64,000 bases of DNA from Ranitomeya imitator (GCF_032444005.1 NC_091288.1:198586001-198650000), one strand, 5' to 3'; numbered from the stretch's first letter, positions 1,065 through 55,370 are shown. The notes: generated by a model not told the origin, from the sequence alone. Numbers and translations are program-made.

Positions 1065-1105
1065 GGCTCTTATAAGAGCCACCACCTCCTCCCCGCAGAG
1101 CTGTA
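1065..1105 (+). terminator. H1 3' stem-loop and histone downstream element
   Basis: GGCTCT-TATA-AGAGCC (1065-1080), then ACCAC, then AGAGCTGTA at 1097-1105 (complementary to the vertebrate U7 5' end UACAGCUCU). Confidence 0.93.
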
Positions 1106-4100
1106 TGATCAGTGCCACCACCTCCTCCCCGCAGAGCTGTATGATCAGTGCCAACACCTCCTCCCAGCAGAGCTGTATGATCAGAGCCACCATCTCCTCC
1201 CCGCAGAGCTGTATGATCAGTGCCACCTCCTCCTCCCCGCAGAGCTGTATGATCAGAGCCACCACCTCCTCCCCGCAGAACTGTATGATCAGAGCCACCA
1301 TCTCCTCCCCGCAGAGCTGTATGATCAGTGCCACCACTTCCTCCCCGCAGAGCTGTATGATCAGAGCCACCACCTCCTCCCCGCAGAGATGTATGATCAG
1401 AGCCACCACCTCCTCCCCGCAGAGATGTATGATCAGAGCCACCACCTCCTCCCTGCAGAGCTGTATGATCAGAGAAATCACCTCCTCCCCGCAGAGCTGT
1501 ATGATCAGTGCCACCACCTCCTCCCCGCAGAGGTGTATGATCAGTGCCACCACCTCCTCCCCGCAGAGCTGTATGATCAGTGCCACCACCTCCTCCCCGC
1601 AGAGCTGTATGATCAGTGCCACCTCCTCCTCCCCGCAGAGCTGTATGATCAGAGCCACCACCTCTTCCCTGCAGAGCTGTATGATCAGAGAAATCACCTC
1701 CACCCCGCAGAGCTGTATGATCAGAGCCACCACCTACTCCTCCCTGCAGAGCTGTATGATCAGAGAAATCACCTCCACCCCGCAGAGCTGTATGATCAGT
1801 GCCACCACCTTCTCCCCCGCAGAGCTGTATGATCAGAGCCACCACTTCCTCCCCGCAGAGCTGTATAATCAGTGCCACCACCTCCACCCCGCAGAGCTGT
1901 ATGATCAGAGAAATCACCTCCACCCCGCAGAGCTGTATGATCAGAGCCACCACCTCCTCCCCGCAGAGCTGTATGATCAGAGCCACCACCCTCTCCCCGC
2001 AGAGCTGTATAATCAGTGCCACAACCTCCTCCCCGCAGAGCTGTATGATCAGTGCCACCACCCTCTCCCCGCAGAGCTGTATAATCAGTGTCACCACCTC
2101 CTCCCCGCAGAGCTGTATGATCAGTATGATCAGAGCTGTATGATCAGAGAAATCACCTCCTCCCCGCACAGCTGTATGATCAGTACCACCACCTCCTCCC
2201 CGCAGAGCTGTATGATCAGAGCCACCACCTCCTCCCCGCAGAGCTGTATGATCAGAGCCACCACTTCCTCCCCGCAGAGCTGTATAATCAGTGCCACCAC
2301 CTCCACCCCGCAGAGCTGTATGATCAGAGAAATCACCTCCACCCCGCAGAGCTGTATGATCAGAGCCACCACCTCCTCCCCGCAGAGCTGTATGATCAGA
2401 GCCACCACCCTCTCCCCGCAGAGCTGTATAATCAGTGCCACCACCTCCTCCCCGCAGAGCTGTATGATCAGAGAAATCACCTCCTCCCCGCACAGCTGTA
2501 TGATCAGTACCACCACCTCCTCCCCGCAGAGCTGTATGATCAGAGCCACCACCTCCTCCCCGCAGAGCTGTATGATCAGAGCCACCACCTCCTCCCCGCA
2601 GAGCTGTATGATCAGAGCCACCACTTCCTCCCCGCAGAGCTGTATAATCAGTGCCACCACCTCCTCCCCGCAGAGCTGTATGATCAGTGCCACCACCTCC
2701 TCCCCGCAGAGCTGTATGATCAGTGCCACCTCCTCCTCCCCGCAGAGCTGTATGATCAGAGCCACCACCTCCTCCCCGCAGAGCTGTATGATCAGAGCCA
2801 CCACCTCCTCCCCGCAGAGCTGTATGATCAGTGCCACCACCTCCTCCCCGCAGAGCTGTATGATCAGTGCCACCACCTCCTCCCCGCAGAGCTGTATGAT
2901 CAGTGCCACCTCCTCCTCCCCGCAGAGCTGTATGATCAGTGCCACCTCCTCCTCCCCGCAGAGCTGTATGATCAGAGCCACCACCTCCTCCCTGCAGAGC
3001 TGTATGATCAGAGAAATCACCTCCTCCCCGCACAGCTGTATGATCAGTACCACCACCTCCTCCCCGCAGAGCTGTATGATCAGAGCCACCACCTCCTCCC
3101 CGCAGAGCTGTATGATCAGAGCCACCACCTCCTCCCCGCAGAGCTGTATGATCAGAGCCACCTCCTCCTCCCCGCAGAGCTGTATGATCAGTGCCACCAC
3201 CTCCTCCCCGCAGAGCTGTATGATCAGTGCCACCACCTCCTCCCCGCAGAGCTGTATGATCAGTGCCACCTCCTCCTCCCCGCAGAGCTGTATGATCAGA
3301 GCCACCACCTCCTCCCCGCAGAGCTGTATGATCAGAGCCACCACCTCCTCCCTGCAGAGCTGTATGATCAGAGAAATCACCTCCTCCCCGCACAGCTGTA
3401 TGATCAGTACCACCACCTCCTCCCCGCAGAGCTGTATGATCAGAGCCACCACCTCCTCCCCGCAGAGCTGTATGATCAGAGCCACCACCTCCTCCCTGCA
3501 GAGCTGTATGATCAGAGAAATCACCTCCTCCCCGCAGAGCTGTATGATCAGTGCCACCACCTCCTCCCCGCAGAGATGTATGATCAGAGCCACCACCTCC
3601 TCCCCGCAGAGATGTATGATCAGAGCCACCACCTCCTCCCTGCAGAGCTGTATGATCAGAGAAATCACCTCCTCCCCGCAGAGCTGTATGATCAGTGCCA
3701 CCACCTCCTCCCCGCAGAGGTGTATGATCAGTGCCACCACCTCCTCCCCGCAGAGCTGTATGATCAGTGCCACCACCTCCTCCCCGCAGAGCTGTATGAT
3801 CAGTGCCACCTCCTCCTCCCCGCAGAGCTGTATGATCAGAGCCACCACCTCTTCCCTGCAGAGCTGTATGATCAGAGAAATCACCTCCACCCCGCAGAGC
3901 TGTATGATCAGAGCCACCACCTACTCCTCCCTGCAGAGCTGTATGATCAGAGAAATCACCTCCACCCCGCAGAGCTGTATGATCAGTGCCACCACCTTCT
4001 CCCCCGCAGAGCTGTATGATCAGAGCCACCACTTCCTCCCCGCAGAGCTGTATAATCAGTGCCACCACCTCCACCCCGCAGAGCTGTATGATCAGAGAAA

Positions 4101-7100
4101 TCACCTCCACCCCGCAGAGCTGTATGATCAGAGCCACCACCTCCTCCCCGCAGAGCTGTATGATCAGAGCCACCACCCTCTCCCCGCAGAGCTGTATAAT
4201 CAGTGCCACCACCTCCTCCCCGCAGAGCTGTATGATCAGTGCCACCACCCTCTCCCCGCAGAGCTGTATAATCAGTGTCACCACCTCCTCCCCGCAGAGC
4301 TGTATGATCAGTATGATCAGAGCTGTATGATCAGAGAAATCACCTCCTCCCCGCACAGCTGTATGATCAGTACCACCACCTCCTCCCCGCAGAGCTGTAT
4401 GATCAGAGCCACCACCTCCTCCCCGCAGAGCTGTATGATCAGAGCCACCACTTCCTCCCCGCAGAGCTGTATAATCAGTGCCACCACCTCCACCCCGCAG
4501 AGCTGTATGATCAGAGAAATCACCTCCACCCCGCAGAGCTGTATGATCAGAGCCACCACCTCCTCCCCGCAGAGCTGTATGATCAGAGCCACCACCCTCT
4601 CCCCGCAGAGCTGTATAATCAGTGCCACCACCTCCTCCCCGCAGAGCTGTATGATCAGAGAAATCACCTCCTCCCCGCACAGCTGTATGATCAGTACCAC
4701 CACCTCCTCCCCGCAGAGCTGTATGATCAGAGCCACCACCTCCTCCCCGCAGAGCTGTATGATCAGAGCCACCACCTCCTCCCCGCAGAGCTGTATGATC
4801 AGAGCCACCACTTCCTCCCCGCAGAGCTGTATAATCAGTGCCACCACCTCCTCCCCGCAGAGCTGTATGATCAGTGCCACCACCTCCTCCCCGCAGAGCT
4901 GTATGATCAGTGCCACCTCCTCCTCCCCGCAGAGCTGTATGATCAGAGCCACCACCTCCTCCCCGCAGAGCTGTATGATCAGAGCCACCACCTCCTCCCC
5001 GCAGAGCTGTATGATCAGAGCCACCACCTCCTCCCCGCAGAGCTGTATGATCAGTGCCACCACCTCCTCCCCGCAGAGCTGTATGATCAGTGCCACCTCC
5101 TCCTCCCCGCAGAGCTGTATGATCAGTGCCACCTCCTCCTCCCCGCAGAGCTGTATGATCAGAGCCACCACCTCCTCCCCGCAGAGCTGTATGATCAGAG
5201 CCACCACCTCCTCCCTGCAGAGCTGTATGATCAGAGAAATCACCTCCTCCCCGCACAGCTGTATGATCAGTACCACCACCTCCTCCCCGCAGAGCTGTAT
5301 GATCAGAGCCACCACCTCCTCCCCGCAGAGCTGTATGATCAGAGCCACCACCTCCTCCCTGCAGAGCTGTATGATCAGAGAAATCACCTCCTCCCCGCAG
5401 AGCTGTATGATCAGTGCCACCACCTCCTCCCCGCAGAGGTGTATGATCAGTGCCACCACCTCCTCCCCGCAGAGCTGTATGATCAGTGCCACCACCTCCT
5501 CCCCGCAGAGCTGTATGATCAGTGCCACCTCCTCCTCCCCGCAGAGCTGTATGATCAGAGCCACCACCTCTTCCCTGCAGAGCTGTATGATCAGAGAAAT
5601 CACCTCCACCCCGCAGAGCTGTATGATCAGAGCCACCACCTACTCCTCCCTGCAGAGCTGTATGATCAGAGAAATCACCTCCACCCCGCAGAGCTGTATG
5701 ATCAGTGCCACCACCTTCTCCCCCGCAGAGCTGTATGATCAGAGCCACCACTTCCTCCCCGCAGAGCTGTATAATCAGTGCCACCACCTCCACCCCGCAG
5801 AGCTGTATGATCAGAGAAATCACCTCCACCCCGCAGAGCTGTATGATCAGAGCCACCACCTCCTCCCCGCAGAGCTGTATGATCAGAGCCACCACCCTCT
5901 CCCCGCAGAGCTGTATAATCAGTGCCACAACCTCCTCCCCGCAGAGCTGTATGATCAGTGCCACCACCCTCTCCCCGCAGAGCTGTATAATCAGTGTCAC
6001 CACCTCCTCCCCGCAGAGCTGTATGATCAGTATGATCAGAGCTGTATGATCAGAGAAATCACCTCCTCCCCGCACAGCTGTATGATCAGTACCACCACCT
6101 CCTCCCCGCAGAGCTGTATGATCAGAGCCACCACCTCCTCCCCGCAGAGCTGTATGATCAGAGCCACCACTTCCTCCCCGCAGAGCTGTATAATCAGTGC
6201 CACCACCTCCACCCCGCAGAGCTGTATGATCAGAGAAATCACCTCCACCCCGCAGAGCTGTATGATCAGAGCCACCACCTCCTCCCCGCAGAGCTGTATG
6301 ATCAGAGCCACCACCCTCTCCCCGCAGAGCTGTATAATCAGTGCCACCACCTCCTCCCCGCAGAGCTGTATGATCAGAGAAATCACCTCCTCCCCGCACA
6401 GCTGTATGATCAGTACCACCACCTCCTCCCCGCAGAGCTGTATGATCAGAGCCACCACCTCCTCCCCGCAGAGCTGTATGATCAGAGCCACCACCTCCTC
6501 CCCGCAGAGCTGTATGATCAGAGCCACCACTTCCTCCCCGCAGAGCTGTATAATCAGTGCCACCACCTCCTCCCCGCAGAGCTGTATGATCAGTGCCACC
6601 ACCTCCTCCCCGCAGAGCTGTATGATCAGTGCCACCTCCTCCTCCCCGCAGAGCTGTATGATCAGAGCCACCACCTCCTCCCCGCAGAGCTGTATGATCA
6701 GAGCCACCACCTCCTCCCCGCAGAGCTGTATGATCAGTGCCACCACCTCCTCCCCGCAGAGCTGTATGATCAGTGCCACCACCTCCTCCCCGCAGAGCTG
6801 TATGATCAGTGCCACCTCCTCCTCCCCGCAGAGCTGTATGATCAGTGCCACCTCCTCCTCCCCGCAGAGCTGTATGATCAGAGCCACCACCTCCTCCCTG
6901 CAGAGCTGTATGATCAGAGAAATCACCTCCTCCCCGCACAGCTGTATGATCAGTACCACCACCTCCTCCCCGCAGAGCTGTATGATCAGAGCCACCACCT
7001 CCTCCCCGCAGAGCTGTATGATCAGAGCCACCACCTCCTCCCCGCAGAGCTGTATGATCAGAGCCACCTCCTCCTCCCCGCAGAGCTGTATGATCAGTGC

Positions 7101-10100
7101 CACCACCTCCTCCCCGCAGAGCTGTATGATCAGTGCCACCACCTCCTCCCCGCAGAGCTGTATGATCAGTGCCACCTCCTCCTCCCCGCAGAGCTGTATG
7201 ATCAGAGCCACCACCTCCTCCCCGCAGAGCTGTATGATCAGAGCCACCACCTCCTCCCTGCAGAGCTGTATGATCAGAGAAATCACCTCCTCCCCGCACA
7301 GCTGTATGATCAGTACCACCACCTCCTCCCCGCAGAGCTGTATGATCAGAGCCACCACCTCCTCCCCGCAGAGCTGTATGATCAGAGCCACCACCTCCTC
7401 CCTGCAGAGCTGTATGATCAGAGAAATCACCTCCTCCCCGCAGAGCTGTATGATCAGTGCCACCACCTCCTCCCCGCAGAGATGTATGATCAGAGCCACC
7501 ACCTCCTCCCCGCAGAGATGTATGATCAGAGCCACCACCTCCTCCCTGCAGAGCTGTATGATCAGAGAAATCACCTCCTCCCCGCAGAGCTGTATGATCA
7601 GTGCCACCACCTCCTCCCCGCAGAGGTGTATGATCAGTGCCACCACCTCCTCCCCGCAGAGCTGTATGATCAGTGCCACCACCTCCTCCCCGCAGAGCTG
7701 TATGATCAGTGCCACCTCCTCCTCCCCGCAGAGCTGTATGATCAGAGCCACCACCTCTTCCCTGCAGAGCTGTATGATCAGAGAAATCACCTCCACCCCG
7801 CAGAGCTGTATGATCAGAGCCACCACCTACTCCTCCCTGCAGAGCTGTATGATCAGAGAAATCACCTCCACCCCGCAGAGCTGTATGATCAGTGCCACCA
7901 CCTTCTCCCCCGCAGAGCTGTATGATCAGAGCCACCACTTCCTCCCCGCAGAGCTGTATAATCAGTGCCACCACCTCCACCCCGCAGAGCTGTATGATCA
8001 GAGAAATCACCTCCACCCCGCAGAGCTGTATGATCAGAGCCACCACCTCCTCCCCGCAGAGCTGTATGATCAGAGCCACCACCCTCTCCCCGCAGAGCTG
8101 TATAATCAGTGCCACCACCTCCTCCCCGCAGAGCTGTATGATCAGTGCCACCACCCTCTCCCCGCAGAGCTGTATAATCAGTGTCACCACCTCCTCCCCG
8201 CAGAGCTGTATGATCAGTATGATCAGAGCTGTATGATCAGAGAAATCACCTCCTCCCCGCACAGCTGTATGATCAGTACCACCACCTCCTCCCCGCAGAG
8301 CTGTATGATCAGAGCCACCACCTCCTCCCCGCAGAGCTGTATGATCAGAGCCACCACTTCCTCCCCGCAGAGCTGTATAATCAGTGCCACCACCTCCACC
8401 CCGCAGAGCTGTATGATCAGAGAAATCACCTCCACCCCGCAGAGCTGTATGATCAGAGCCACCACCTCCTCCCCGCAGAGCTGTATGATCAGAGCCACCA
8501 CCCTCTCCCCGCAGAGCTGTATAATCAGTGCCACCACCTCCTCCCCGCAGAGCTGTATGATCAGAGAAATCACCTCCTCCCCGCACAGCTGTATGATCAG
8601 TACCACCACCTCCTCCCCGCAGAGCTGTATGATCAGAGCCACCACCTCCTCCCCGCAGAGCTGTATGATCAGAGCCACCACCTCCTCCCCGCAGAGCTGT
8701 ATGATCAGAGCCACCACTTCCTCCCCGCAGAGCTGTATAATCAGTGCCACCACCTCCTCCCCGCAGAGCTGTATGATCAGTGCCACCACCTCCTCCCCGC
8801 AGAGCTGTATGATCAGTGCCACCTCCTCCTCCCCGCAGAGCTGTATGATCAGAGCCACCACCTCCTCCCCGCAGAGCTGTATGATCAGAGCCACCACCTC
8901 CTCCCCGCAGAGCTGTATGATCAGAGCCACCACCTCCTCCCCGCAGAGCTGTATGATCAGTGCCACCACCTCCTCCCCGCAGAGCTGTATGATCAGTGCC
9001 ACCACCTCCTCCCCGCAGAGCTGTATGATCAGTGCCACCTCCTCCTCCCCGCAGAGCTGTATGATCAGTGCCACCTCCTCCTCCCCGCAGAGCTGTATGA
9101 TCAGAGCCACCACCTCCTCCCTGCAGAGCTGTATGATCAGAGAAATCACCTCCTCCCCGCACAGCTGTATGATCAGTACCACCACCTCCTCCCCGCAGAG
9201 CTGTATGATCAGAGCCACCACCTCCTCCCCGCAGAGCTGTATGATCAGAGCCACCACCTCCTCCCCGCAGAGCTGTATGATCAGAGCCACCTCCTCCTCC
9301 CCGCAGAGCTGTATGATCAGTGCCACCACCTCCTCCCCGCAGAGCTGTATGATCAGTGCCACCACCTCCTCCCCGCAGAGCTGTATGATCAGTGCCACCT
9401 CCTCCTCCCCGCAGAGCTGTATGATCAGAGCCACCACCTCCTCCCCGCAGAGCTGTATGATCAGAGCCACCACCTCCTCCCTGCAGAGCTGTATGATCAG
9501 AGAAATCACCTCCTCCCCGCACAGCTGTATGATCAGTACCACCACCTCCTCCCCGCAGAGCTGTATGATCAGAGCCACCACCTCCTCCCCGCAGAGCTGT
9601 ATGATCAGAGCCACCACCTCCTCCCTGCAGAGCTGTATGATCAGAGAAATCACCTCCTCCCCGCAGAGCTGTATGATCAGTGCCACCACCTCCTCCCCGC
9701 AGAGCTGTATGATCAGTGCCACCACCTCCTCCCCGCAGAGCTGTATGATCAGTGCCACCACCTCCTCCCCGCAGAGCTGTATGATCAGTGCCACCACCTC
9801 CTCCCCGCAGAGCTGTATGATCAGTGCCACCTCCTCCTCCCCGCAGAGCTGCATGATCAGTGCCACCACCTCCTCCCCGCAGAGCTGTATGATCAGTGCC
9901 ACCACCTCCTCCCCGCAGAGCTGTATGATCAGTGCCATCACCTCCTCCCCGCAGAGCTGTATGATCAGTGCCACCTCAACCTCCCCGCAGAGCTGTATGA
10001 TCAGAGCCACCACCTCCTCCCTGCAGAGCTGTATGATCAGAGAAATCACCTCCTCCCCGCACAGCTGTATGATCAGTACCACCACCTCCTCCCCGCAGAG

Positions 10101-18034: not shown

Positions 18035-21000
18035 CTGCGGGGGAGAAGGTGTTGGCACTGATCATAGAGCTCTGCGGGGTGGAGGTGATTTCTCTGATCA
18101 TACAGCTCTGCAGGGAGGAGTAGGTGGTGGCACTGATGATACAGCTCTGCGGGGAGGAGGTGGTGGCACTGATCATACAGCTCTGCGGGGTGGAGGTGAT
18201 TTCTCTGATCATACAGCTCTGCGGGGAGAAGGAGGTGGCACTGATCATACAGCTCTGCGGGGAGGAGGTGGTGGCACTGATCATACAGCTCTGCGGGGAG
18301 GAGGTGGTGGCACTGATCATACAGCTCTGCGGGGAGGAGGTGGTGGCACTGATTATACAGCTCTGCGGGGAGAGGGTGGTGGCTCTGATCATACAGCTCT
18401 GCGGGGAGGAGGTGGTGGCTCTGATCATACAGCTCTGCGGGGTGGAGGTGATTTCTCTGATCATACAGCTCTGCGGGGTGGAGGTGGTGGCACTGATTAT
18501 ACAGCTCTGCGGGGAGGAAGTGGTGGCTCTGATCATACAGCTCTGCGGGGGAGAAGGTGGTGGCACTGATCATACAGCTCTGCGGGGTGGAGGTGATTTC
18601 TCTGATCATACAGCTCTGCAGGGAGGAGTAGGTGGTGGCACTGATGATACAGCTCTGCGGGGAGGAGGTGGTGGCACTGATCATACAGCTCTGCGGGGTG
18701 GAGGTGATTTCTCTGATCATACAGCTCTGCAGGGAGGAGTAGGTGGTGGCACTGATGATACAGCTCTGCGGGGAGGAGGTGATGGCACTGATCATACAGC
18801 TCTGCGGGGAGGAGGTGGTGGCTCTGATCATGCAGCTCTGCGGGGAGGAGGTGGTGGCACTGATCATACAGCTGTGCGGGGAGGAGGTGGTGGCACTGAT
18901 CATACAGCTCTGCGGGGAGGAGGTGGTGGCTCTGATCATACAGCTCTGCGGGGAGGAGGTGGTGGTACTGATCATACAGCTGTGCGGGGAGGAGGTGATT
19001 TCTCTGATCATACAGCTCTGCAGGGAGGAGGTGGTGGCTCTGATCATACAGCTCTGCGGGGAGGAGGAGGTGGCACTGATCATACAGCTCTGCGGGGAGG
19101 AGGTGGTGGCACTGATCATACAGCTCTGCGGGGAGGAGGTGGTGGCACTGATCATACAGCTCTGCGGGGAGGAGGTGGTGGCACTGATCATACAGCTCTG
19201 CGGGGAGGAGGAGGTGGCACTGATCATACAGCTCTGCGGGGAGGAGGTGGTGGCACTGATCATACAGCTCTGCGGGGAGGAGGTGGTGGCACTGATCATA
19301 CAGCTCTGCGGGGAGGAGGTGGTGGCACTGATCATACAGCTCTGCGGGGAGGAGGTGGTGGCACTGATCGTACAGCTCTGCGGGGAGGAGGTGGTGGCAC
19401 TGATCATACAGCTCTGCAGGGAGGAGGAGGTTATGGCTCTGATCATACAGGTCTGAGGGGAGTAGGTGGTGGCTCTGATCATACAGCTCTGCGGGGAGAG
19501 GGTGGTGGCACTGATCATACAGCTCTGCGGGGAGGAGGTGATGGCTCTGATCCTACAGCTCTGCGGGGAGAATGTGGTGGCTCTGATCATACAGCTCTGC
19601 GGGGAGAAGGTGGTGGCACTGATCATACGGCTCTCCGGGGAGGAGGTGATTTCTCTGATCATACAGCTCTGCAGGGAGGAGGTGGTGGCTCTGATCATAC
19701 AGCTCTGCGGGGAGGAGGTGGTGGCTCTGATCATGCAGCTCTGCGGGGAGGAGGTGGTGGCACTGATCATACAGCTGTGCGGGGAGGAGGTGGTGGCACT
19801 GATCATACAGCTCTGCGGGGAGGAGGTGGTGGCACTGATCATACAACTGTGCGGGGAGGAGGTGATTTCTCTGATCATACAGCTCTGCAGGGAGGAGGTG
19901 GTGGCTCTGATCATACAGCTCTGCGGGGAGGAGGTGGTGGCACTGATCATACAGCTCTGCGGGGGAGAAGGTGGTGGCACTGATCATACAGCTCTGCGGG
20001 GTGGAGGTGATTTCTCTGATCAGACAGCTCTGCAGGGAGGAGTAGGTGGTGGCACTGATGATACAGCTCTGCGGGGAGGAGGTGGTGGCACTGATCATAC
20101 AGCTCTGCGGGGAGGAGGAGGTGGCACTGATCATACAGCTCTGCGGGGAGGAGGTGGTGGCACTGATCATACAGCTCTGCGGGGAGGAGGTGGTGGCACT
20201 GATCATACAGCTCTGCGGGGAGGAAGTGGTGGCACTGATCATACAGCTCTGCGGGGAGGAGGTGGTGGCACTGATCGTACAGCTCTGCGTGGAGGAGGTG
20301 GTGGCACTGATCATACAGCTCTGCAGGGAGGAGGTGATGGCACTGATCATACAGCTCTGCGGGGAGAAGGTGTTGGCACTGATCATACAGCTCTCCGGGG
20401 AGGAGGTGATTTCTCTGATCATACAGCTCTGCAGGGAGGAGGAGGTTATGGCTCTGATCATACAGGTCTGAGGGGAGTAGGTGGTGGCTCTGATCATACA
20501 GCTCTGCGGGGAGAGGGTGGTGGCACTGATCATACAGCTCTGCGGGGAGGATGTGATGGCTCTAATCCTACAGCTCTGCGAGGAGAATGTGGTGGCTCTG
20601 ATCATACAGCTCTGCGGGGAGAAGGTGGTGGCACTGATCATACGGCTCTCCGGGGAGGAGGTGATTTCTCTGATCATACAGCTCTGCAGGGAGGAGGTGG
20701 TGGCTCTGATCATACAGCTCTGCGGAGAGGAGGTGGTGGCTCTGATCATGCAGCTCTGCGGGGAGGAGGTGGTGGCACTGATCATACAGCTGTGCGGGGA
20801 GGAGGTGGTGGCACTGATCATACAGCTCTGCGGGGAGGAGGTGGTGGTACTGATCATACAGCTGTGCGGGGAGGAGGTGATTTCTCTGATCATACAGCTC
20901 TGCAGGGAGGAGGTGGTGGCTCTGATCATACAGCTCTGCGGGGAGGTTGAGGTGGCACTGATCATACAGCTCTGCGGGGAGGAGGTGATGGCACTGATCA

Positions 21001-21731
21001 TACAGCTCTGCGGGGAGGAGGTGGTGGCACTGATCATACAGCTCTGCGGGGAGGAGGTGGTGGCACTGATCATGCAGCTCTGCGGGGAGGAGGAGGTGGC
21101 ACTGATCATACAGCTCTGCGGGGAGGAGGTGGTGGCACTGATCATACAGCTCTGCGGGGAGGAGGTGGTGGCACTGATCATACAGCTCTGCAGGGAGGAG
21201 GTGGTGGCTCTGATCATACAGCTCTGCGGGGAGGAGGTGGTGGCTCTGATCATACAGCTCTGCGGGGAGGAGGTGGTGGTACTGATCATACAGCTGTGCG
21301 GGGAGGAGGTGATTTCTCTGATCATACAGCTCTGCAGGGAGGAGGTGGTGGCTCTGATCATACAGCTCTGCGGGGAGGAGGTGGTGGCTCTGATCATACA
21401 GCTCTGCGGGGAGGAGGAGGTGGCACTGATCATACAGCTCTGCGGGGAGGAGGTGGTGGCACTGATCATACAGCTCTGCGGGGAGGAGGTGGTGGCACTG
21501 ATCATACAGCTCTGCGGGGAGGAGGAGGTGGCTCTGATCATACAGCTCTGCGGGGAGGAGGTGGTGGCTCTGATCATACAGCTCTGCGGGGAGGAGGTGG
21601 TGGCTCTGATCATACAGCTCTGCGGGGAGGAGGTGGTGGTACTGATCATACAGCTGTGCGGGGAGGAGGTGATTTCTCTGATCATACAGCTCTGCAGGGA
21701 GGAGGTGGTGGCACTGATCATACAGCTCTGC
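18035..21731 (-). repeat. Same 36-bp minisatellite, inverted block (~100 units)
   Basis: G-rich reverse-complement units GATCATACAGCTCTGCGGGGAGGAGGTGGTGGC(A/T)CT between two fold-back junctions. Confidence 0.96.
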
Positions 21732-21875
21732 TCCTCCCCGCAGAGCTGTATGATCAGTGCCACCTCCTCCTCCCCGCAGAGCTGTATGATCAGAGCCACC
21801 TCCTCCTCCCCGCAGAGCTGTATGATCAGTGCCACCACCTCCTCCCCGCAGAGCTGTATGATCAGTGCCACCACC
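21732..21875 (+). repeat. Same minisatellite, 4 units back in + orientation before the CR1
   Basis: TCCTCCCCGCAGAGCTGTATGATCAG... resumes after the junction at 21731. Confidence 0.9.
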
Positions 21876-21882
21876 ACCAGTG

Positions 21883-22141
21883 CCAAACCAGGGATTCAAG
21901 CTTCAGGAGGCTAATTTGCATATTCCAGGTGCCTTCTGGGAGAAGCGAAGTCTCCCTAAGCTAGAAGATCGTTGGGTACAGCCGGGACCAGCTGCTTCGA
22001 AAGCATCACCAAACCAGGGATTCAAGCTTCAGGAGGCTAATTTGCATATTCCAGGTGCCTTCTGGGAGAAGCGAAGTCTCCCTAAGCTAGAAGATCGTTG
22101 GGTACAGCCGGGACCAGCTGCTTCGAAAGCATCACCAAACC
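21883..22141 (+). repeat. Two identical 126-bp monomers in the CR1 5' UTR, each with an octamer motif
   Basis: CCAAACCAGGGATTCAAG...AAAGCATCA begins at 21883 and 22009, partial third at 22135; ATTTGCAT at 21914-21921 and 22040-22047. Confidence 0.92.
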
Positions 22142-22256
22142 GCGCGCCTTATGGCGCGCGAATTTTTGCCTGTAGGACATTATTGCAAGAGAGCTTGGCT
22201 GAGTAGATTACACAAGAAGGAAAACACACAGCAAGTCAGCAGGATCTAGCAGCAAC

Positions 22257-23210
22257 ATGGCAGATGTGACAACCTACATGGTGAGCTGCAGCATGTGCTA
22301 CATGTTCACAGATCGACCAGAAGAAGAATCCAATTTCACCTGTCAGAAGTGTAGACTAGTGGCCCTTTTAGAAGAAAAGGTGCGGGGTCTGGAAGAAAGA
22401 ATAGCAACTTTGAAACTCATCAAAGAGAATGAAGACTTTCTAGACAGAACAGAAGCATCTTTACTGGTCACAGAAGGTGAAAAAAGTGTCAGAGAACCTC
22501 CAAAAGCAGATGAGTGGAAGCATGTGACCAAAAGAAGCAAGAAGACCATGGAGAAATCACCAACCACACAACTGAAGAACCGATATCAAATCTTTGTAGA
22601 GGATGAAGATGGCACACCTAAGAATGAAGCAATACCAGCAAGCAAAAAAGAAAAGGGCACACAGCAACAAGTGACAGCAAAAAGTACAGCCAAGAAGCAA
22701 CGAAGAGTGGTGGTGGTGGGAGACTCACTACTGAGAGGCACAGAAGCAACCATCTGCAGACCGGACATAACTGCAAGAGAAGTATGCTGCCTTCCAGGTG
22801 CGATGATCAAGGATGTGACCGATAGGATACCAAAGCTCTTCAGCTCCAAGGACGTCCACCCATTTCTTCTGATACATGTTGGCACCAATGACACGGCAAG
22901 GAAGGACCTACCGACAATCTGCAAGGACTTTGAAGAGTTGGGGAAGAAAGTAAAGGAACTGGATGCACAGGTAGTTTTTTCTTCTATCCTTCCAGTAGAC
23001 GGGCATGGCACCAGGAGATGGAACAGGATCCTTGATGCAAACAACTGGCTAAGACGATGGTGCAGACAACAAGGATTTGGATTCCTGGACCACGGTGTGA
23101 ATTACTGGTATGATGGACTCCTCGCCAGAGACGGACTACACCTCAACAAACCTGGGAAACACACATTCGCCAGAAGACTCGCTACAATCATCAGGAGGGC
23201 GTTAAACTAG
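22257..23210 (+). CDS. CR1 ORF1p: Cys-rich zinc-binding N-terminus, coiled coil, SGNH/GDSL esterase domain
   Basis: CSMC...CQKC, LEEKVRGLEERIATL heptads, esterase blocks VVGDSLLRG, HVGTND and DGLHL with catalytic Ser/Asp/His present. Confidence 0.9.
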   Translation: MADVTTYMVSCSMCYMFTDRPEEESNFTCQKCRLVALLEEKVRGLEERIATLKLIKENEDFLDRTEASLLVTEGEKSVREPPKADEWKHVTKRSKKTMEKSPTTQLKNRYQIFVEDEDGTPKNEAIPASKKEKGTQQQVTAKSTAKKQRRVVVVGDSLLRGTEATICRPDITAREVCCLPGAMIKDVTDRIPKLFSSKDVHPFLLIHVGTNDTARKDLPTICKDFEELGKKVKELDAQVVFSSILPVDGHGTRRWNRILDANNWLRRWCRQQGFGFLDHGVNYWYDGLLARDGLHLNKPGKHTFARRLATIIRRALN

Positions 23211-23347
23211 AAGAAAAGGGGACGGGAAGAAAAACATTAGACTCGAACAAAGACGACCCAGGAAAACATATTCAGAAGGGAGGTAAGAACATTTCTAAAA
23301 CAATCCACAGTGAGGAGATTGGAACAAAACAAAATCCTCTAAACTGC

Positions 23348-26128
23348 ATGCTCGCAAACGCCAGAAGCCTGACAAACAAGATGGAAGAACTAGAAGCAGA
23401 AATATCTACAGGTAACTTTGACATAGTGGGAATAACCGAGACATGGTTAGATGAAAGCTATGACTGGGCAGTTAACTTACAGGGTTACAGTCTGTTTAGA
23501 AAGGATCGTAAAAATCGGAGAGGAGGAGGGGTTTGTCTCTATGTAAAGTCTTGTCTAAAGTCCACTTTAAGGGAGGATATTAGCGAAGGGAATGAGGATG
23601 TCGAGTCCATATGGGTTTAAATTCATGGAGGGAAAAATGGTAACAAAATTCTCATTGGGGTCTGTTACAAACCCCCAAATATAACAGAAAGCATGGAAAG
23701 TCTACTTCTAAAGCAGATAGATGAAGCTGCAACCCATAATGAGGTCCTGGTTATGGGGGACTTTAACTACCCGGATATTAACTGGGAAACAGAAACCTGT
23801 GAAACCCATAAAGGCAACAGGTTTCTGCTAATAACCAAGAAAAATTATCTTTCACAATTGGTGCAGAATCCAACCAGAGGAGCAGCACTTTTAGACCTAA
23901 TACTATCTAATAGACCTGACAGAATAACAAATCTGCAGGTGGTTGGGCATTTAGGAAATAGCGACCACAATATTGTGCAGTTTCACCTGTCTTTCACTAG
24001 GAGGACTTGTCAGGGAGTCACAAAAACATTGAACTTTAGGAAGGCAAAGTTTGAACAGCTTAGAGATGCCCTTAATCTGGTAGACTGGGACAATATCCTC
24101 AGAAATGAGAATACAGATAATAAATGGGAAATGTTTAAGAACATCCTAAATAGGCAGTGTAAGCGGTTTATACCTTGTGGGAATAAAAGGACTAGAAATA
24201 GGAAAAACCCAATGTGGCTAAACAAAGAAGTAAGACAGGCAATTAACAGTAAAAAGAAAGCATTTGCACTACTAAAGCAGGATGGCACCATTGAAGCTCT
24301 AAAAAACTATAGGGAGAAAAATACTTTATCTAAAAAACTAATTAAAGCTGCCAAAAAGGAAACAGAGAAGCACATTGCTAAGGAGAGTAAAACTAATCCC
24401 AAACTGTTCTTCAACTATATCAATAGTAAAAGAATAAAAACTGAAAATGTAGGCCCCTTAAAAAATAGTGAGGAAAGAATGGTTGTAGATGACGAGGAAA
24501 AAGCTAACATATTAAACACCTTCTTCTCCACGGTATTCACGGTGGAAAATGAAATGCTAGGTGAAATCCCAAGAAACAATGAAAACCCTATATTAAGGGT
24601 CACCAATCTAACCCAAGAAGAGGTGCGAAACCGGCTAAATAAGATTAAAATAGATAAATCTCCGGGTCCGGATGGCATACACCCACGAGTACTAAGAGAA
24701 CTAAGTAATGTAATAGATAAACCATTATTTCTTATTTTTAGTGACTCTATAGCGACAGGGTCTGTTCCGCAGGATTGGCGCATAGCAAATGTGGTGCCAA
24801 TATTCAAAAAGGGCTCTAAAAGTGAACCTGGAAATTATAGGCCAGTAAGTCTAACCTCTATTGTTGGTAAAATATTTGAAGGGTTTCTGAGGGATGTTAT
24901 TCTGGATTATCTCAATGAGAATAACTGTTTAACTCCATATCAGCATGGGTTTATGAGAAATCGCTCCTGTCAAACCAATCTAATCAGTTTTTATGAAGAG
25001 GTAAGCTATAGGCTGGACCACGGTGAGTCATTGGACGTGGTATATCTCGATTTTTCCAAAGCGTTTGATACCGTGCCGCACAAGAGGTTGGTACACAAAA
25101 TGAGAATGCTTGGTCTGGGGGAAAATGTGTGTAAATGGGTTAGTAACTGGCTTAGTGATAGAAAGCAGAGGGTGGTTATAAATGGTATAGTCTCTAACTG
25201 GGTCGCTGTGACCAGTGGGGTACCGCAGGGGTCAGTATTGGGACCTGTTCTCTTCAACATATTCATTAATGATCTGGTAGAAGGTTTACACAGTAAAACA
25301 TCGATATTTGCAGATGATACAAAACTATGTAAAGCAGTTAATACAAGAGAAGATAGTATTCTGCTACAGATGGATCTGGATAAGTTGGAAACTTGGGCTG
25401 AAAGGTGGCAGATGAGGTTTAACAATGATAAATGTAAGGTTATACACATGGGAAGAGGGAATCAATATCACCATTACACACTGAACGGGAAACCACTGGG
25501 TAAATCTGACAGGGAGAAGGACTTGGGGATCCTAGTTAATGATAAACTTACCTGGAGCAGCCAGTGCCAGGCAGCAGCTGCCAAGGCAAACAGGATCATG
25601 GGGTGCATTAAAAGAGGTCTGGATACACATGATGAGAGCATTATACTGCCTCTGTACAAATCCCTAGTTAGACCGCACATGGAGTACTGTGTCCAGTTTT
25701 GGGCACCGGTGCTCAGGAAGGATATAATGGAACTAGAGAGAGTACAAAGGAGGGCAACAAAATTAATAAAGGGGATAGGAGAACTACAATACCCAGATAG
25801 ATTAGCGAAATTAGGATTATTTAGTCTAGAAAAAAGACGACTGAGGGGCGATCTAATAACCATGTATAAGTATATAAGGGGACAATACAAATATCTCGCT
25901 GAGGATCTGTTTATACCAAGGAAGGTGACGGGCACAAGGGGGCATTCTTTGCGTCTGGAGGAGAGAAGGTTTTTCCACCAACACAGAAGAGGATTCTTTA
26001 CTGTTAGGGCAGTGAGAATCTGGAATTGCTTGCCTGAGGAGGTGGTGATGGCGAACTCAGTCGAGGGGTTCAAGAGAGGCCTGGATGTCTTCCTGGAGCA
26101 GAACAATATTGTATCATACAATTATTAG
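23348..26128 (+). pseudogene. CR1 ORF2p (APE endonuclease plus reverse transcriptase) with a single in-frame stop
   Basis: APE motifs ANARSL, GITETW, GDFNYP, SDHN; RT motifs NYRPVSLTS, LDFSKAFD, GVPQGSVLGP, FADD. TAA at 23618-23620 joins the 23348 and 23693 ORFs in the same frame. The true start may lie slightly upstream. Confidence 0.93.
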
Positions 26129-26241
26129 GTTCTGTAGAAGGACGTAGATCTGGGTATTTATTATGATGGAATATAGGCTGAACTGGATGGACAAATGTCT
26201 TTTTTCGGCCTTACTAACTATGTTACTATGTTACTATGTTA

Positions 26242-29126
26242 CCTCCTCCCCGCAGAGCTGTATGATCAGTGCCACCACCTCCTCCCCGCAGAGCTGTATG
26301 ATCAGTGCCACCTCCTCCTCCCCGCAGAGCTGTATGATCAGAGCCACCACCTCCTCCCCGCAGAGCTGTATGATCAGAGCCACCACCTCCTCCCTGCAGA
26401 GCTGTATGATCAGAGAAATCACCTCCTCCCCGCACAGCTGTATGATCAGTACCACCACCTCCTCCCCGCAGAGCAGTATGATCAGAGCCACCACCTCCTC
26501 CCCGCAGAGCTGTATGATCAGTGCCACCACCTCCTCCCCGCAGAGCTGTATGATCAGTGCCACCTCCTCCTCCCCGCAGAGCTGTATGATCAGAGAAATC
26601 ACCTCCACCCCGCAGAGCTGTATGATCAGTGCCACCACCTCCTCCCCGCAGAGCTGTATCATCAGTGCCACCACCTACTCCTCCCTGCAGAGCTGTATGA
26701 TCAGAGAAATCACCTCCACCCCGCAGAGCTGTATGATCAGTGCCACCACCTTCTCCCCCGCAGAGCTGTATGATCAGAGCCACCACTTCCTCCCCGCAGA
26801 GCTGTATAATCAGTGCCACCACCTCCACACCGCAGAGCTGTATGATCAGAGAAATCACCTCCACCCCGCAGAGCTGTATGATCAGAGCCACCACCCTCTC
26901 CCCGCAGAGCTGTATAATCAGTGCCACCACCTCCTCCCCGCAGAGCTGTATGATCAGTGCCACCACCTCCTCCCCGCAGAGCTGTATGATCAGTGCCACC
27001 ACCTCCTCCCCGCAGAGCTGTATGATCAGTGCCACCTCCTCCTCCCCGCAGAGCTGTATGATCAGAGCCACCTCCTCCTCCCCGCAGAGCTGTATGATCA
27101 GTGCCACCACCTCCTCCCCGCAGAGCTGTATGATCAGTGCCACCACCTCCTCCCCGCAGAGCTGTATGATCAGTGCCACCTCCTCCTCCCCGCAGAGCTG
27201 TATGATCAGAGCCACCACCTCCTCCCCGCAGAGCTGTATGATCAGAGCCACCACCTCCTCCCTGCAGAGCTGTATGATCAGAGCCACCACCTCCTCCCCG
27301 CAGAGCTGTATGATCAGAGCCACCACCTCCTCCCTGCAGAGCTGTATGATCAGAGAAATCACCTCCTCCCCGCAGAGCTGTATGATCAGTGCCACCACCT
27401 CCTCCCCGCAGAGCTGTATGATCAGTGCCACCACCTCCTCCCCGCAGAGCTGTATGATCAGTGCCACCACCTCCTCCCCGCAGAGCTGTATGATCAGTGC
27501 CACCACCTCCTCCCTGCAGAGCTGTATGATCAGAGAAATCACCTCCTCCCCGCACAGCTGTATGATCAGTACCAACACCTCCTCCCTGCAGAGCTGTATG
27601 ATCAGAGAAATCACCTCCTCCCCGCACAGCTGTATGATCAGTACCACCACCTCCTCCCCGCAGAGCTGTATGATCAGTGCCACCACCTCCTCCCCGCAGA
27701 GCTGTATGATCAGAGCCACCACCTCCTCCCCGCAGAGCTGTATGATCAGTGCCACCACCTCCTCCCCGCACAGCTGTATGATCAGTGCCACCACCTCCTC
27801 CCCGCAGAGCTGCATGATCAGAACCACCACCTCCTCCCCGCAGAGCTGTATGATCAGAGCCACCACCTCCTCCCCGCAGAGCTGTATGATCAGTGCCACC
27901 ACCTCCTCCCCGCAGAGCTGTATCATCAGTGCCACCACCTACTCCTCCCTGCAGAGCTGTATGATCAGAGAAATCACCTCCACCCCGCAGAGCTGTATGA
28001 TCAGTGCCACCACCTCCTCCCCGCAGAGCTGTATCATCAGTGCCACCACCTACTCCTCCCTGCAGAGCTGTATGATCAGAGAAATCACCTCCACCCCGCA
28101 GAGCTGTATGATCAGTGCCACCACCTTCTCCCCCGCAGAGCTGTATGATCAGAGCCACCACTTCCTCCCCGCAGAGCTGTATAATCAGTGCCACCACCTC
28201 CACCCCGCAGAGCTGTATGATCAGAGAAATCACCTCCACCCCGCAGAGCTGTATGATCAGAGCCACCACCTCCTCCCCTCAGAGCTGTATGATCAGAGCC
28301 ACCACCCTCTCCCCGCAGAGCTGTATAATCAGTGCCACCACCTCCTCCCCGCAGAGCTGTATGATCAGTGCCACCACCTCCTCCCCGCAGAGCTGTATGA
28401 TCAGTGCCACCACCTCCTCCCCGCAGAGCTGTATGATCAGTGCCACCTCCTTCTCCCCGCAGAGCTGTATGATCAGAGAAATCACCTCCACCCCGCAGAG
28501 CTGTATGATCAGTGCCACCACCTCCTCCCCGCAGAGCTGTATGATCAGTGCCACCACCTCCTCCCCGCAGAGCTGTATGATCAGTGCCACCTCCTCCTCC
28601 CCGCAGAGCTGTATGATCAGAGCCACCACCTCCTCCCCGCAGAGCTGTATGATCAGAGCCACCACCTCCTCCCTGCAGAGCTGTATGATCAGAGAAATCA
28701 CCTCCTCCCCGCACAGCTGTATGATCAGTACCACCACCTCCTCCCCGCAGAGCAGTATGATCAGAGCCACCACCTCCTCCCCGCAGAGCTGTATGATCAG
28801 TGCCACCACCTCCTCCCCGCAGAGCTGTATGATCAGTGCCACCTCCTCCTCCCCGCAGAGCTGTATGATCAGAGAAATCACCTCCACCCCGCAGAGCTGT
28901 ATGATCAGTGCCACCACCTCCTCCCCGCAGAGCTGTATCATCAGTGCCACCACCTACTCCTCCCTGCAGAGCTGTATGATCAGAGAAATCACCTCCACCC
29001 CGCAGAGCTGTATGATCAGTGCCACCACCTTCTCCCCCGCAGAGCTGTATGATCAGAGCCACCACTTCCTCCCCGCAGAGCTGTATAATCAGTGCCACCA
29101 CCTCCTCCCCGCAGAGCTGTATGATC
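26242..29126 (+). repeat. 36-bp H1-HDE minisatellite, block after the CR1 (~80 units)
   Basis: Same unit; ends at ...GAGCTGTATGATC|GGTTTTCCTAC. Confidence 0.96.
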
Positions 29127-29298: not shown

Positions 29299-29946
<648 letters not shown>

Positions 29947-29975: not shown

Positions 29976-29991
29976 GGCTCTTTTCAGAGCC
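29976..29991 (+). terminator. H3 3' stem-loop
   Basis: GGCTCTTTTCAGAGCC followed by ACCA. Confidence 0.95.
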
Positions 29992-34563: not shown

Positions 34564-34579
34564 GGCTCTTCTAAGAGCC
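34564..34579 (+). terminator. Orphan histone stem-loop with no intact gene upstream
   Basis: AAA-GGCTCTTCTAAGAGCC-CCCACA, followed by an AAGAGCC HDE-like motif at the usual distance. Confidence 0.8.
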
Positions 34580-35371: not shown

Positions 35372-35770
<399 letters not shown>

Positions 35771-35800
35771 NNNNNTCCGTGCTCCGCTCCTCACCCCAAA

Positions 35801-35872
35801 GGCTCTTCTAAGAGCCACCCACACCCTCCCTATAAGAGCCACCTACACCCTCACTATAAGAGCCACCCACAC
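35801..35872 (+). terminator. H2B stem-loop followed by a 24-bp triplication of its 3' arm
   Basis: GGCTCTTCTAAGAGCC 35801-35816; AAGAGCCACC(C/T)ACAC at 35810, 35834 and 35858. Confidence 0.9.
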
Positions 35873-55360: not shown

Positions 55361-55370
55361 TATAAGAGCC
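55355..55370 (-). terminator. H1 3' stem-loop, copy B
   Basis: GGCTCT-TATA-AGAGCC. Confidence 0.93.

What the first reader, a model, noticed from the sequence alone, without database searches (positions are those of the whole stretch)
1065..29126. A 36-bp minisatellite built from the H1 3'-processing signal: hundreds of tandem U7 snRNP binding sites
Seen: the first repeat unit is the right arm of the H1 stem-loop (AGAGCC 1075-1080), the cleavage region (ACCAC), a spacer and AGAGCTGTA (1097-1105). This unit is reiterated over ~23.6 kb here and 8.6 kb in the inverted unit, roughly 890 copies in total. Known: the histone downstream element pairs with the U7 snRNA 5' end (vertebrate ...GUUACAGCUCUUUU..., from memory). 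AGAGCUGUA is a perfect 9-nt complement, better than the HDE-like motifs after H3, H4, H2A or H2B in this window. The motif is nearly invariant among units while the other half varies freely. In newts, histone clusters are known to be separated by satellite DNA that is transcribed by read-through on lampbrush loops next to U7-rich nuclear bodies, but I know of no satellite that is itself made of the HDE. Inference: H1 read-through RNA would be a multivalent U7 snRNP scaffold or sponge (seeding a histone locus body), or a fail-safe cleavage/termination array, since strong U7 pairing can support cleavage without SLBP. Units lack the 5' stem arm, so they cannot bind SLBP.
Basis: partly seen in the sequence, partly recalled or inferred. 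Interest (0 to 1): 0.9.

Follow-up and report, generated by a model that had tools for sequence, protein, structure and literature searches.

The report
Satellite built from H1 3'-processing signal
In a poison-frog (Ranitomeya) histone cluster, the 36 bases that tell the cell where to cut histone H1 mRNA have been copied head-to-tail about 890 times into a fast-changing satellite, which most likely carries its U7-binding motif by inheritance and not because the motif is used.

Summary
A 36-bp unit starts at the first base of the 3' arm of the H1 stem-loop (1075) and ends 5 nt past AGAGCTGTA. It is repeated 892 times, between H1 and H3, in two inverted cluster copies with identical junctions. 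The 9-mer occurs 762 times (0.89 expected) and forms 9 contiguous pairs with the mammalian U7 5' end; the frog's own U7 could not be checked.

The functional reading is not supported by what could be tested:
- The low-variation block is 18 nt (GCAGAGCTGTATGATCAG). The part that cannot pair with U7 is at least as conserved as the 9-mer.
- Single-step mutations hit the 9-mer at the uniform rate (14 seen, 14.5 expected).
- Only 84 distinct units exist, because multi-kb blocks were recently duplicated.
- H1-proximal units are no better kept than the rest.
- About 100 units are inverted, and a LINE sits inside the array.
- Array length differs 2.7-fold between copies whose flanks are 99% identical.
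- Other H1 genes in Ranitomeya and Phyllobates lie about 1 kb from H3.
- Published assays show that 9 bp, even with the stem-loop, cleaves poorly.

Best reading: a young, probably neutral satellite born from the H1 processing signal. A U7 scaffold or fail-safe terminator role remains possible but unlikely. The unusual origin is the interesting part.

The parts
401..1036 (+). Histone H1 coding sequence, copy A (211 aa; a second in-frame ATG lies at 398)
   Evidence: ORF list. Pfam Linker_histone, E 9.5e-23. 96-99% identical to Ranitomeya H1 proteins.
1065..1080 (+). H1 3' stem-loop: 6-bp stem, loop UAUA
   Evidence: Sequence. Rfam Histone3 29.9 bits, E 1.5e-6, below the gathering score of 34.
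1081..1085 (+). ACCAC cleavage region of H1 pre-mRNA, which is also bases 7-11 of repeat unit 1
   Evidence: Sequence. Inferred from the known position of histone pre-mRNA cleavage, 4-5 nt after the stem (PMC7026596).
1097..1105 (+). H1 histone downstream element AGAGCTGTA, 12 nt after ACCAC
   Evidence: 9 contiguous Watson-Crick pairs with the mammalian U7 5' region, -14.0 kcal/mol.
1075..18034 (+). Array block A1: 471 units in H1 sense orientation, built of 48-, 61-, 68- and 109-unit higher-order blocks
   Evidence: TRF score 26170. Wrap-around alignment. Unit-symbol map and lag analysis.
18019..18039 (.). Centre of a near-perfect palindrome; arms are identical for 739 nt, with 1 mismatch in the first kb
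   Evidence: Whether it is a real fold-back duplication or an assembly artefact is undecided.
18036..21731 (-). Array block A2: 102 units in inverted orientation, a mirror copy of about the last 108 units of A1 with a few unit indels
   Evidence: Read from H1 it carries TACAGCTCT 84 times and no sense HDE.
21732..21878 (+). Array block A3: 4 units back in sense orientation; the 21731/21732 junction is a plain breakpoint, not a palindrome
21879..26240 (+). Near full-length CR1/L2-like LINE inserted into a unit. It has a 126-bp x2 5' repeat, ORF1 with a GDSL-esterase domain, ORF2 with a split endonuclease plus RT, and an (ACTATGTT)3 tail.
26241..29126 (+). Array block A4: 80 units, ending ...TGATC|GGTTTTCC, 409 bp before the H3 ATG
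29536..29946 (+). Histone H3, the gene downstream of the array (stem-loop at 29976-29991)
46735..55360 (-). Array B: 239 units downstream of H1 copy B, with the same two junctions as array A
   Evidence: Flanks are 99.1-99.5% identical to those of copy A.
55355..55370 (-). Stem-loop of H1 copy B
55399..56034 (-). Histone H1 copy B (one residue differs from copy A, G to D)

Best explanation
This is a young, lineage-restricted satellite (minisatellite-sized unit) that arose from the 3'-processing region of one histone H1 gene type in Ranitomeya. SHOWN: one 36-bp segment was duplicated in tandem. It runs from the first base of the stem-loop's 3' arm through ACCAC, an 11-nt C-rich spacer and the HDE AGAGCTGTA, to 5 nt beyond it. 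The resulting array fills the H1-to-H3 spacer, and it grows, shrinks and homogenises by exchange of multi-kb higher-order blocks. INFERRED: the U7-complementary 9-mer in each unit is there by descent, not by selection. Its high frequency reflects recent block amplification. The stronger variability of the other half reflects a low-complexity C-rich tract (CCA/CCT triplets and one CpG) that mutates or converts more readily. INFERRED: if H1 read-through occurs, as is documented at amphibian histone loci, the RNA would carry hundreds of weak 9-bp, SLBP-less U7 sites and no poly(A) hexamer. Any U7 binding would then be a by-product and not a maintained function.
For: Origin: identical in-phase junctions in both copies (TATA|AGAGCC at the H1 side, TGATC|GGTTTTCC at the H3 side). 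The unit contains AGAGCC-ACCAC, the universal histone 3' arm and tail, which fixes the direction of derivation. Turnover: only 84 distinct raw units among about 896 (76 aligned haplotypes among the 892 complete units). Exact 49-unit (1.76-kb) runs are repeated, with lag peaks at 48, 61, 68 and 109 units. The two arrays are 23.7 and 8.6 kb although their flanks are 99.1-99.5% identical. Other loci carrying the identical H1 protein have H3 5.8 kb downstream, or no called gene within 10 kb. No specific constraint on the HDE: single-step mutation events number 14 in the 9-mer against 14.5 expected (p=1). TGATCAG has 4 against 11.3 expected (p=0.012). All 9-column windows in the conserved half are 82-87% intact. 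One HDE-breaking variant (G to C at HDE position 2) reached 65 copies. H1-proximal units are no better kept: 7/10 and 9/10 intact against 85% overall. Tolerated disruption: about 102 inverted units and a 4.4-kb LINE. Dispensability: a second R. variabilis locus, another R. imitator H1 subtype and Phyllobates terribilis have H1-to-H3 gaps of about 0.9-1.4 kb. A parallel on a small scale: the H2B 3' end carries a 24-bp x2.7 tandem repeat that also starts with the loop and 3' arm.
Against: Variable sites are not spread evenly. With all inferred events, the 18-nt half GCAGAGCTGTATGATCAG is depleted (HDE 17 against 26.2 expected, p=0.04; TGATCAG 10 against 20.4, p=0.009) and columns 3-20 are enriched (71 against 52.5, p=0.0004). 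High-frequency variants arose almost only in the C-rich half. This could reflect selection on that half, whether for U7 or for something else. About 88% of units keep the H1 sense orientation. The arrays and the spacer up to H3 contain no AATAAA or ATTAAA, so U7-type sites are the only recognisable 3' signals a read-through polymerase would meet. Neutrality is an inference; no expression or population data were available.
Confidence: 0.6

Rival explanations
1. Fail-safe terminator. Polymerases that miss the H1 site transcribe hundreds of HDEs, each keeping the native ACCAC-to-HDE spacing. Low-efficiency, SLBP-independent U7/CPSF73 cleavage at any of them, followed by 5'-3' degradation, ends transcription before H3.
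For: Every unit keeps the spacing of the authentic site. There are 398 sense HDEs in A1 and 201 in B. No poly(A) hexamer lies between H1 and H3 except inside the LINE. [quoted passage not shown] Read-through at amphibian histone loci is documented (PMC11602149).
Against: Nine uninterrupted pairs gave under 5% cleavage even with a stem-loop, and stem-loop-less substrates needed 15-16 bp. The unit pairs with only part of the universally conserved UCUUU box of U7. H1-proximal units are not better preserved. One block is inverted. Other H1-to-H3 spacers are about 1 kb with no room for a large array.
Confidence: 0.12
2. Multivalent U7 snRNP scaffold or sponge. Array RNA retained at the locus concentrates (or titrates) U7 snRNP and helps build or enlarge the histone locus body.
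For: Hundreds of 9-nt U7 complements would sit on one potential transcript. Amphibian oocyte spheres (HLBs) sit at histone loci and contain U7 (PMC12046345). A tandem repeat whose nascent RNA is rich in processing signals nucleates an snRNP-rich condensate on chicken lampbrush loops (LL2R preprint).
Against: There is no motif-specific conservation. HLB assembly by NPAT/Mxc and FLASH does not need U7 snRNP (PMC10730174). U7 is scarce, about 500-fold below spliceosomal snRNPs, so a sponge could harm histone processing. In the predicted fold the 9-mer is only about 37% unpaired. Array size is highly unstable, and no large array fits at other H1 genes.
Confidence: 0.08
3. The conserved 18-nt half is selected for something other than U7. 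Candidates are a DNA- or RNA-binding protein site around the palindromic TGATCA, or the pyrimidine tract plus CAG acting as a 3'-splice-site-like or poly-C-binding-protein platform.
For: The strongest depletion of mutations is in TGATCAG, not in the HDE. Units contain CCTCCTCCCCGCAG, which resembles a 3' splice site (by inspection).
Against: No factor or motif match was identified. The pattern is equally explained by a higher mutation or conversion rate in the low-complexity half. The number of independent events is small.
Confidence: 0.1
4. Assembly artefact: the array, or parts of it, is over-expanded or mis-joined.
For: A near-perfect palindrome with 739-nt identical arms is a pattern that fold-back chimeras can produce. 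The exact multi-kb block repeats are hard to assemble.
Against: Two arrays with identical junctions lie in one window. A second, independent R. imitator assembly reads from H1 into the first two units (P0004). Several further loci with the same H1 have long gene-free stretches downstream. The palindrome arms differ by a substitution and by unit indels. The existence of the array is therefore secure; only the inverted block is in doubt (about 0.3 that it is artefactual).
Confidence: 0.03
5. The repeat encodes a repetitive protein (ORFs of up to 3,422 codons are open).
For: The 36-bp period is a multiple of 3, and two frames on each strand are open.
Against: The open frames follow from a unit with only one stop-capable frame per strand. 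No related proteins were found in 5.8 billion sequences or in 1.84 billion representatives, where the only hits were unrelated 12-residue periodic repeats at 13-54% identity. No Pfam stretch passes on its own.
Confidence: 0.01

Closest known systems
Newt (Notophthalmus) histone-cluster satellite transcribed by read-through on lampbrush loops at the sphere (HLB) loci
   Same: Long tandem-repeat tracts lie between histone genes in an amphibian, directly downstream of a histone gene. Read-through from histone promoters into downstream genes or satellite DNA is documented in Notophthalmus and Xenopus oocytes (PMC11602149 citing Diaz and Gall 1985). Spheres at these loci contain U7 snRNP (PMC12046345).
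   Different: The newt satellite unit is about 220 bp and, from my own knowledge, unrelated to histone signals. Here the unit is the H1 3'-processing half-signal itself. The array sits inside the cluster, between H1 and H3. Transcription is untested.
Canonical replication-dependent histone 3'-end signal (stem-loop + HDE, SLBP + U7 snRNP)
   Same: The first unit is the authentic H1 site. All units keep the 3' arm or a near copy, ACCAC, the spacer length and, in 85% of units, the 9-nt U7 complement.
   Different: Units 2 to n lack the 5' arm, so there is no hairpin and no SLBP binding. The complementarity is 9 bp, without the AAAG part of the purine core.
Minisatellites and satellites with higher-order repeats that evolve by unequal exchange
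   Same: Head-to-tail units, nested higher-order blocks, a few unit haplotypes amplified, a large length difference between near-identical paralogous loci, and a tolerated transposon insertion and inversion.
   Different: The seed sequence is a known RNA-processing signal, and the array is anchored in phase to the gene that provided it.
Tandem-repeat architectural RNAs carrying many processing signals (chicken LL2R lumpy-loop repeat; STR-rich arcRNAs)
   Same: In concept, one transcript with many copies of an snRNP-recognition motif could nucleate a locus-bound RNP body in oocytes.
   Different: For LL2R, transcription, retention and snRNP recruitment were shown. Here only the motif count is known, and the motif shows no specific constraint.
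H2B 3'-flank micro-array in the same window (35809-35872)
   Same: A tandem repeat that also starts with the loop and 3' arm of a histone stem-loop (TAAGAGCCACCCAC).
   Different: 24-bp unit and only 2.7 copies.

Membership tests
Histone 3'-end processing signal (stem-loop + HDE) | 6-bp stem, 4-nt loop hairpin with A-rich 5' flank and ACCCA-like 3' flank (SLBP site) | tested here: met
   Applies to the H1 site only (1060-1106). Rfam RF00032 gives 29.9 bits, E 1.5e-6, below the gathering score of 34; the loop UAUA keeps U at positions 1 and 3.
Histone 3'-end processing signal (stem-loop + HDE) | The same hairpin present in each repeat unit | tested here: not met
   GGCTCT (the 5' arm) occurs 0 times on the sense strand of A1, A3, A4 and B. 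Array RNA is not more structured than shuffles, z = 0.34.
Histone 3'-end processing signal (stem-loop + HDE) | Downstream element complementary to the U7 snRNA 5' end, at ruler distance from the cleavage site | tested here: met
   9 contiguous pairs with UACAGCUCU of human and mouse U7, -14.0 kcal/mol, 12 nt after ACCAC; intact in 755 of 892 units. The U7 used is a mammalian proxy. Only the AGAG part of the AAAGAG purine core is present.
Histone 3'-end processing signal (stem-loop + HDE) | Pairing with this species' own U7, and actual cleavage | not testable with these tools
   No U7 gene in the window. Frog genome DNA could not be fetched. Only the UCUUU box is universally conserved in U7 (PMC5054213).
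Satellite or minisatellite with higher-order repeats | Head-to-tail units forming long arrays | tested here: met
   TRF period 36; 471 + 102 + 4 + 80 + 239 copies, 89-90% matches.
Satellite or minisatellite with higher-order repeats | Higher-order block structure, and copy-number change between paralogous loci | tested here: met
   Lag peaks at 48, 61, 68 and 109 units; exact 49-unit runs. Arrays of 23.7 and 8.6 kb with 99% identical flanks. Spacings differ at other loci.
Read-through-transcribed histone-locus satellite (newt type) | Satellite located between histone genes | tested here: met
   H1-array-H3 arrangement found twice.
Read-through-transcribed histone-locus satellite (newt type) | Transcribed from the upstream histone promoter | not testable with these tools
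   No RNA data. No Logan contig carries the exact H1 protein.
Multivalent small-RNA/snRNP scaffold or sponge RNA | Many binding motifs on one strand of one potential transcript | tested here: met
   398 sense 9-mers in A1, 72 in A4 and 201 in B.
Multivalent small-RNA/snRNP scaffold or sponge RNA | Binding motif conserved above its surroundings | tested here: not met
   Single-step events 14 against 14.5 expected. The adjacent non-complementary TGATCAG is more depleted. Window scan is flat at 82-87%.
Multivalent small-RNA/snRNP scaffold or sponge RNA | Expressed, and bound by the factor in vivo | not testable with these tools
   Needs RNA-seq, FISH or pull-down.

The most novel reading that the evidence does not exclude
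Read-through RNA from this H1 gene type is a natural poly-HDE transcript. It would work either as a U7-dependent fail-safe cleavage and termination zone that insulates H3, or as a locus-retained scaffold that concentrates U7 snRNP at the histone locus body in oocytes or embryos. In either case the array would be an RNA-processing signal turned into a satellite with a function.
Probability: 0.15. Interest if true: 0.8.

Novelty: new variant of a known kind. Interest (0 to 1): 0.5.

Why it matters
It is a clean, datable case of a satellite born from a known RNA-processing signal, anchored in phase to its parent gene. I found no description of a repeat made of the histone downstream element in the held literature. 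It shows how quickly such arrays turn over: 2.7-fold in length while the flanks diverge by under 1%. It also provides a natural substrate with hundreds of SLBP-less U7 sites. With it one could test, in an amphibian with lampbrush chromosomes, whether multivalent weak HDEs recruit U7 snRNP, cause cleavage or termination, or influence histone locus bodies. It also explains odd public gene models at these loci: an H1 model read through into the first units, H1-H3 fusions and a 13.6-kb 'intron'.

Tried and rejected
- **Fetching frog DNA.** Eight look-ups of orthologous or paralogous H1 loci in Ranitomeya, Phyllobates and Anomaloglossus returned gene maps only, because the sample files are too large. 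Presence of the unit in other species could not be read directly.
- **R. variabilis model P0001.** I first took its 13.6-kb span as evidence of an array there. Its last exon translates to a diverged stem-loop/unit-like sequence. That is compatible with an array but also with a second H1 3' fragment, so I do not count it.
- **Satellite ORFs as protein queries.** Two frames against 5.8 billion proteins gave no hits. One frame against 1.84 billion representatives gave only unrelated 12-residue periodic proteins. Pfam hits have no stretch that passes on its own. The coding hypothesis is rejected.
- **Metagenome scan** for a 22-nt unit core: 0 hits.
- **BLAST between array blocks** failed on this repeat. 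I replaced it with a unit-symbol comparison.
- **U7 gene in the window:** none. The three off-array copies of the 9-mer are antisense chance matches downstream of the H4 paralogues, not U7-like genes.
- **Xenopus U7 sequence:** Wu and Gall 1993 is not held, so a mammalian U7 from PMC7026596 served as proxy.
- **Second orientation switch at 21731:** tested as a palindrome and rejected (11 mismatches in 140).

Full report
**What is there**

The window is a histone gene cluster of a dendrobatid frog.
- The H1 protein is 96-99% identical to Ranitomeya H1 proteins.
- The exact 212-residue product is encoded at five or more places on a 1.02-Mb record of assembly GCA_032444005.1. From memory, that is the R. 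imitator reference assembly.

The gene order is as follows:
- H1(+) 401-1036, then the array, then H3(+) 29536-29946, H4(+), an orphan stem-loop, H2B(+, partly N-masked) and H2A(+).
- After that, mirrored: H4(-), H3(-), the second array 46735-55360, and H1(-) 55399-56034.

- H1 ends with a stem-loop, GGCTCT-TATA-AGAGCC at 1065-1080. Rfam Histone3 scores it 29.9 bits, E 1.5e-6, just under the gathering score.
- This is followed by ACCAC, an 11-nt C-rich spacer and AGAGCTGTA at 1097-1105.
- TRF reports 36-bp arrays of 471, 102, 4, 80 and 239 copies.
- A wrap-around alignment to the consensus recovers 892 complete units.
- The 9-mer occurs 762 times against 0.89 expected.
- Both arrays begin at the first base of the stem's 3' arm (TATA|AGAGCC) and end after a whole unit (TGATC|GGTTTTCC).
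- The ancestral single-copy H1 flank can therefore be read off, and the array has a single origin.
- Every unit contains the AGAGCC-ACCAC motif or a one-base variant of it. That motif is common to all histone genes, so the satellite derives from the H1 signal and not the reverse.

**Pairing with U7**

- Human and mouse U7 begin (C/A)AGUGUUACAGCUCUUUUAG (PMC7026596).
- AGAGCUGUA pairs perfectly with UACAGCUCU: 9 contiguous pairs, -14.0 kcal/mol. A perfect duplex is -29.6.
- The other genes in the window score: H4 -12.7 to -14.2, H2B -13.4, H2A -11.8, H3 -7.4.
- Random 45-mers from the window average -8.1, with a 1st percentile of -15.4.
- The flanks of the 9-mer do not pair. Only the AGAG part of the AAAGAG purine core is present.
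- Only the UCUUU box of U7 is universally conserved, and U7 evolves fast (PMC5054213).
- The frog's own U7 could not be retrieved, so the 9-bp figure rests on a mammalian proxy.

**Is the HDE kept by selection?**

Per-column non-consensus frequencies:

| Block | Mean non-consensus |
|---|---|
| HDE 9-mer (columns 23-31) | about 1.8%; its second base is G to C in 7.4% of units |
| Next seven bases, TGATC+AG | about 1.4% |
| Columns 3-20 | about 9% |

- The low-variation block is therefore the 18 nt GCAGAGCTGTATGATCAG. Half of it cannot pair with U7.
- A scan of all 9-column windows is flat at 82-87% intact across that block.
- The 892 units are only 76 aligned haplotypes, so I inferred mutation events on a haplotype network.
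- Single-step events: 14 in the 9-mer against 14.5 expected (p=1); 4 against 11.3 in TGATCAG (p=0.012); 36 against 29 in the variable half.
- All events: 17 against 26.2 in the 9-mer (p=0.04); 10 against 20.4 in TGATCAG; 71 against 52.5 in the variable half (p=0.0004).
- Mutations therefore arise in the HDE about as often as elsewhere. What differs is that a few old variants in the C-rich half were amplified to 35-92 copies.
- That half is a low-complexity CCA/CCT-triplet tract with the unit's only CpG. A mutation or conversion bias is thus a sufficient explanation.
- Units next to H1 are no better preserved: 7/10 and 9/10 intact against 85% overall.

**Array dynamics**

- Written as unit symbols, the arrays show nested higher-order blocks, with lags of 48, 61, 68 and 109 units.
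- Exact 49-unit runs are shared among blocks.
- The flanks of the two inverted cluster copies are 99.1-99.5% identical, yet the arrays are 23.7 and 8.6 kb.
- At other loci with the identical H1 protein, H3 lies 5.8 kb downstream, or no gene is called within 10 kb.
- The array has a near-perfect palindrome centred near 18029. Its arms are identical for 739 nt.
- Behind the palindrome, about 102 units are inverted. This may be real or an assembly fold-back.
- A near full-length CR1/L2-like LINE sits at 21879-26240.
- Other H1 genes have H1-to-H3 gaps of only about 0.9-1.4 kb. These are a second R. variabilis locus, another R. imitator H1 subtype and Phyllobates terribilis. A large array is therefore not a general requirement of H1 expression.
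- An independent R. imitator assembly has a gene model that reads from H1 into the first two units. This confirms the junction.

**Function**

Points in favour of a role:
- Most units keep the H1 sense orientation.
- Each unit keeps the native ACCAC-to-HDE spacing.
- No AATAAA or ATTAAA occurs in any array or in the spacer before H3.
- Read-through from histone promoters into downstream genes and satellite DNA is documented in newt and Xenopus oocytes (PMC11602149).
- A chicken tandem repeat rich in splice donors nucleates an snRNP body on lampbrush loops.

Points against:
- Nine uninterrupted pairs gave under 5% cleavage even with a stem-loop, and stem-loop-less substrates needed 15-16 bp (PMC7026596).
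- HLBs assemble through NPAT/Mxc and FLASH without U7 snRNP (PMC10730174).
- U7 snRNP is scarce.
- The array RNA is unstructured overall (z = 0.34), and its 9-mers are predicted to be only about 37% unpaired.
- The motif shows no specific constraint.

**Verdict**

- The origin from the H1 3' signal is well supported.
- The claims of HDE-specific conservation and of a scaffold, sponge or fail-safe role are not supported by any test possible here, and several indirect lines weigh against them.
- The most likely account is a young, neutral, rapidly turning-over satellite seeded by the H1 processing signal (confidence about 0.6).
- The functional readings together hold about 0.2, and selection on the conserved half for something else about 0.1.
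- I found no description of an HDE-derived repeat in the held literature. It is a new variant of the known association between amphibian histone clusters and satellite DNA.

Noticed in passing
window 35809-35872: The H2B 3' end carries a 24-bp x2.7 tandem repeat whose unit also starts with the loop and 3' arm of the stem-loop (TAAGAGCCACCCAC...). It is the same kind of event as the H1 satellite, on a small scale.
   Followed up: partly
window 34563-34578: An orphan histone stem-loop (GGCTCT-TCTA-AGAGCC) with no histone ORF upstream. It is probably the remnant 3' end of a lost gene.
   Followed up: partly
window 40426-40470, 35804-35850, 34570-34605: After H2A, H2B and the orphan stem-loop, AAGAGCC recurs 23-24 nt downstream of the stem-loop's own AAGAGCC. 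The presumptive HDE cores of these genes therefore look like copies of the stem's 3' half, and 'AGAGCC'-type units of the H1 satellite carry two U7-complementary stretches.
   Followed up: no
window 18019-18039 (arms about 14300-18034 and 18036-21731): Near-perfect palindrome inside the array; arms identical for 739 nt, then a few unit indels. If real, read-through RNA would fold into kilobase-long dsRNA. It may instead be an assembly fold-back.
   Followed up: partly
window 21879-26240; fragments at 31490-31981, 40935-41285, 43879-44370, 62115-62465: CR1/L2-like LINE: GDSL-esterase ORF1, split endonuclease, RT, a 126-bp 5' repeat and an (ACTATGTT)n tail. It is nearly intact inside the array, and 3'-end fragments of the same element are scattered through the histone cluster.
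   Followed up: partly
window 57943-58260 and 59430-59747: Two copies of a 105-codon ORF with no Pfam match, each next to long CT-rich simple repeats (57255-57630, 58800-59114). Nature unknown.
   Followed up: no
public proteins P0004, P0011, P0001 (R. imitator and R. variabilis annotations): Gene models distorted by this locus type. P0004 is an H1 model frame-shifted through its stop into the stem-loop and the first two units. P0011 is an H1-H3 fusion. P0001 is an H1 model with a 13.6-kb span whose last exon translates to a stem-loop/unit-like sequence.
   Followed up: partly
window 33346, 41903, 61489: The only off-array copies of AGAGCTGTA lie antisense, roughly 150-370 nt downstream of the three H4 paralogues. 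They are a single chance match copied with the H4 flank. No U7-like gene is present.
   Followed up: yes
window 35491-35775: A 285-base run of N inside the H2B coding sequence. It was left untouched.
   Followed up: no
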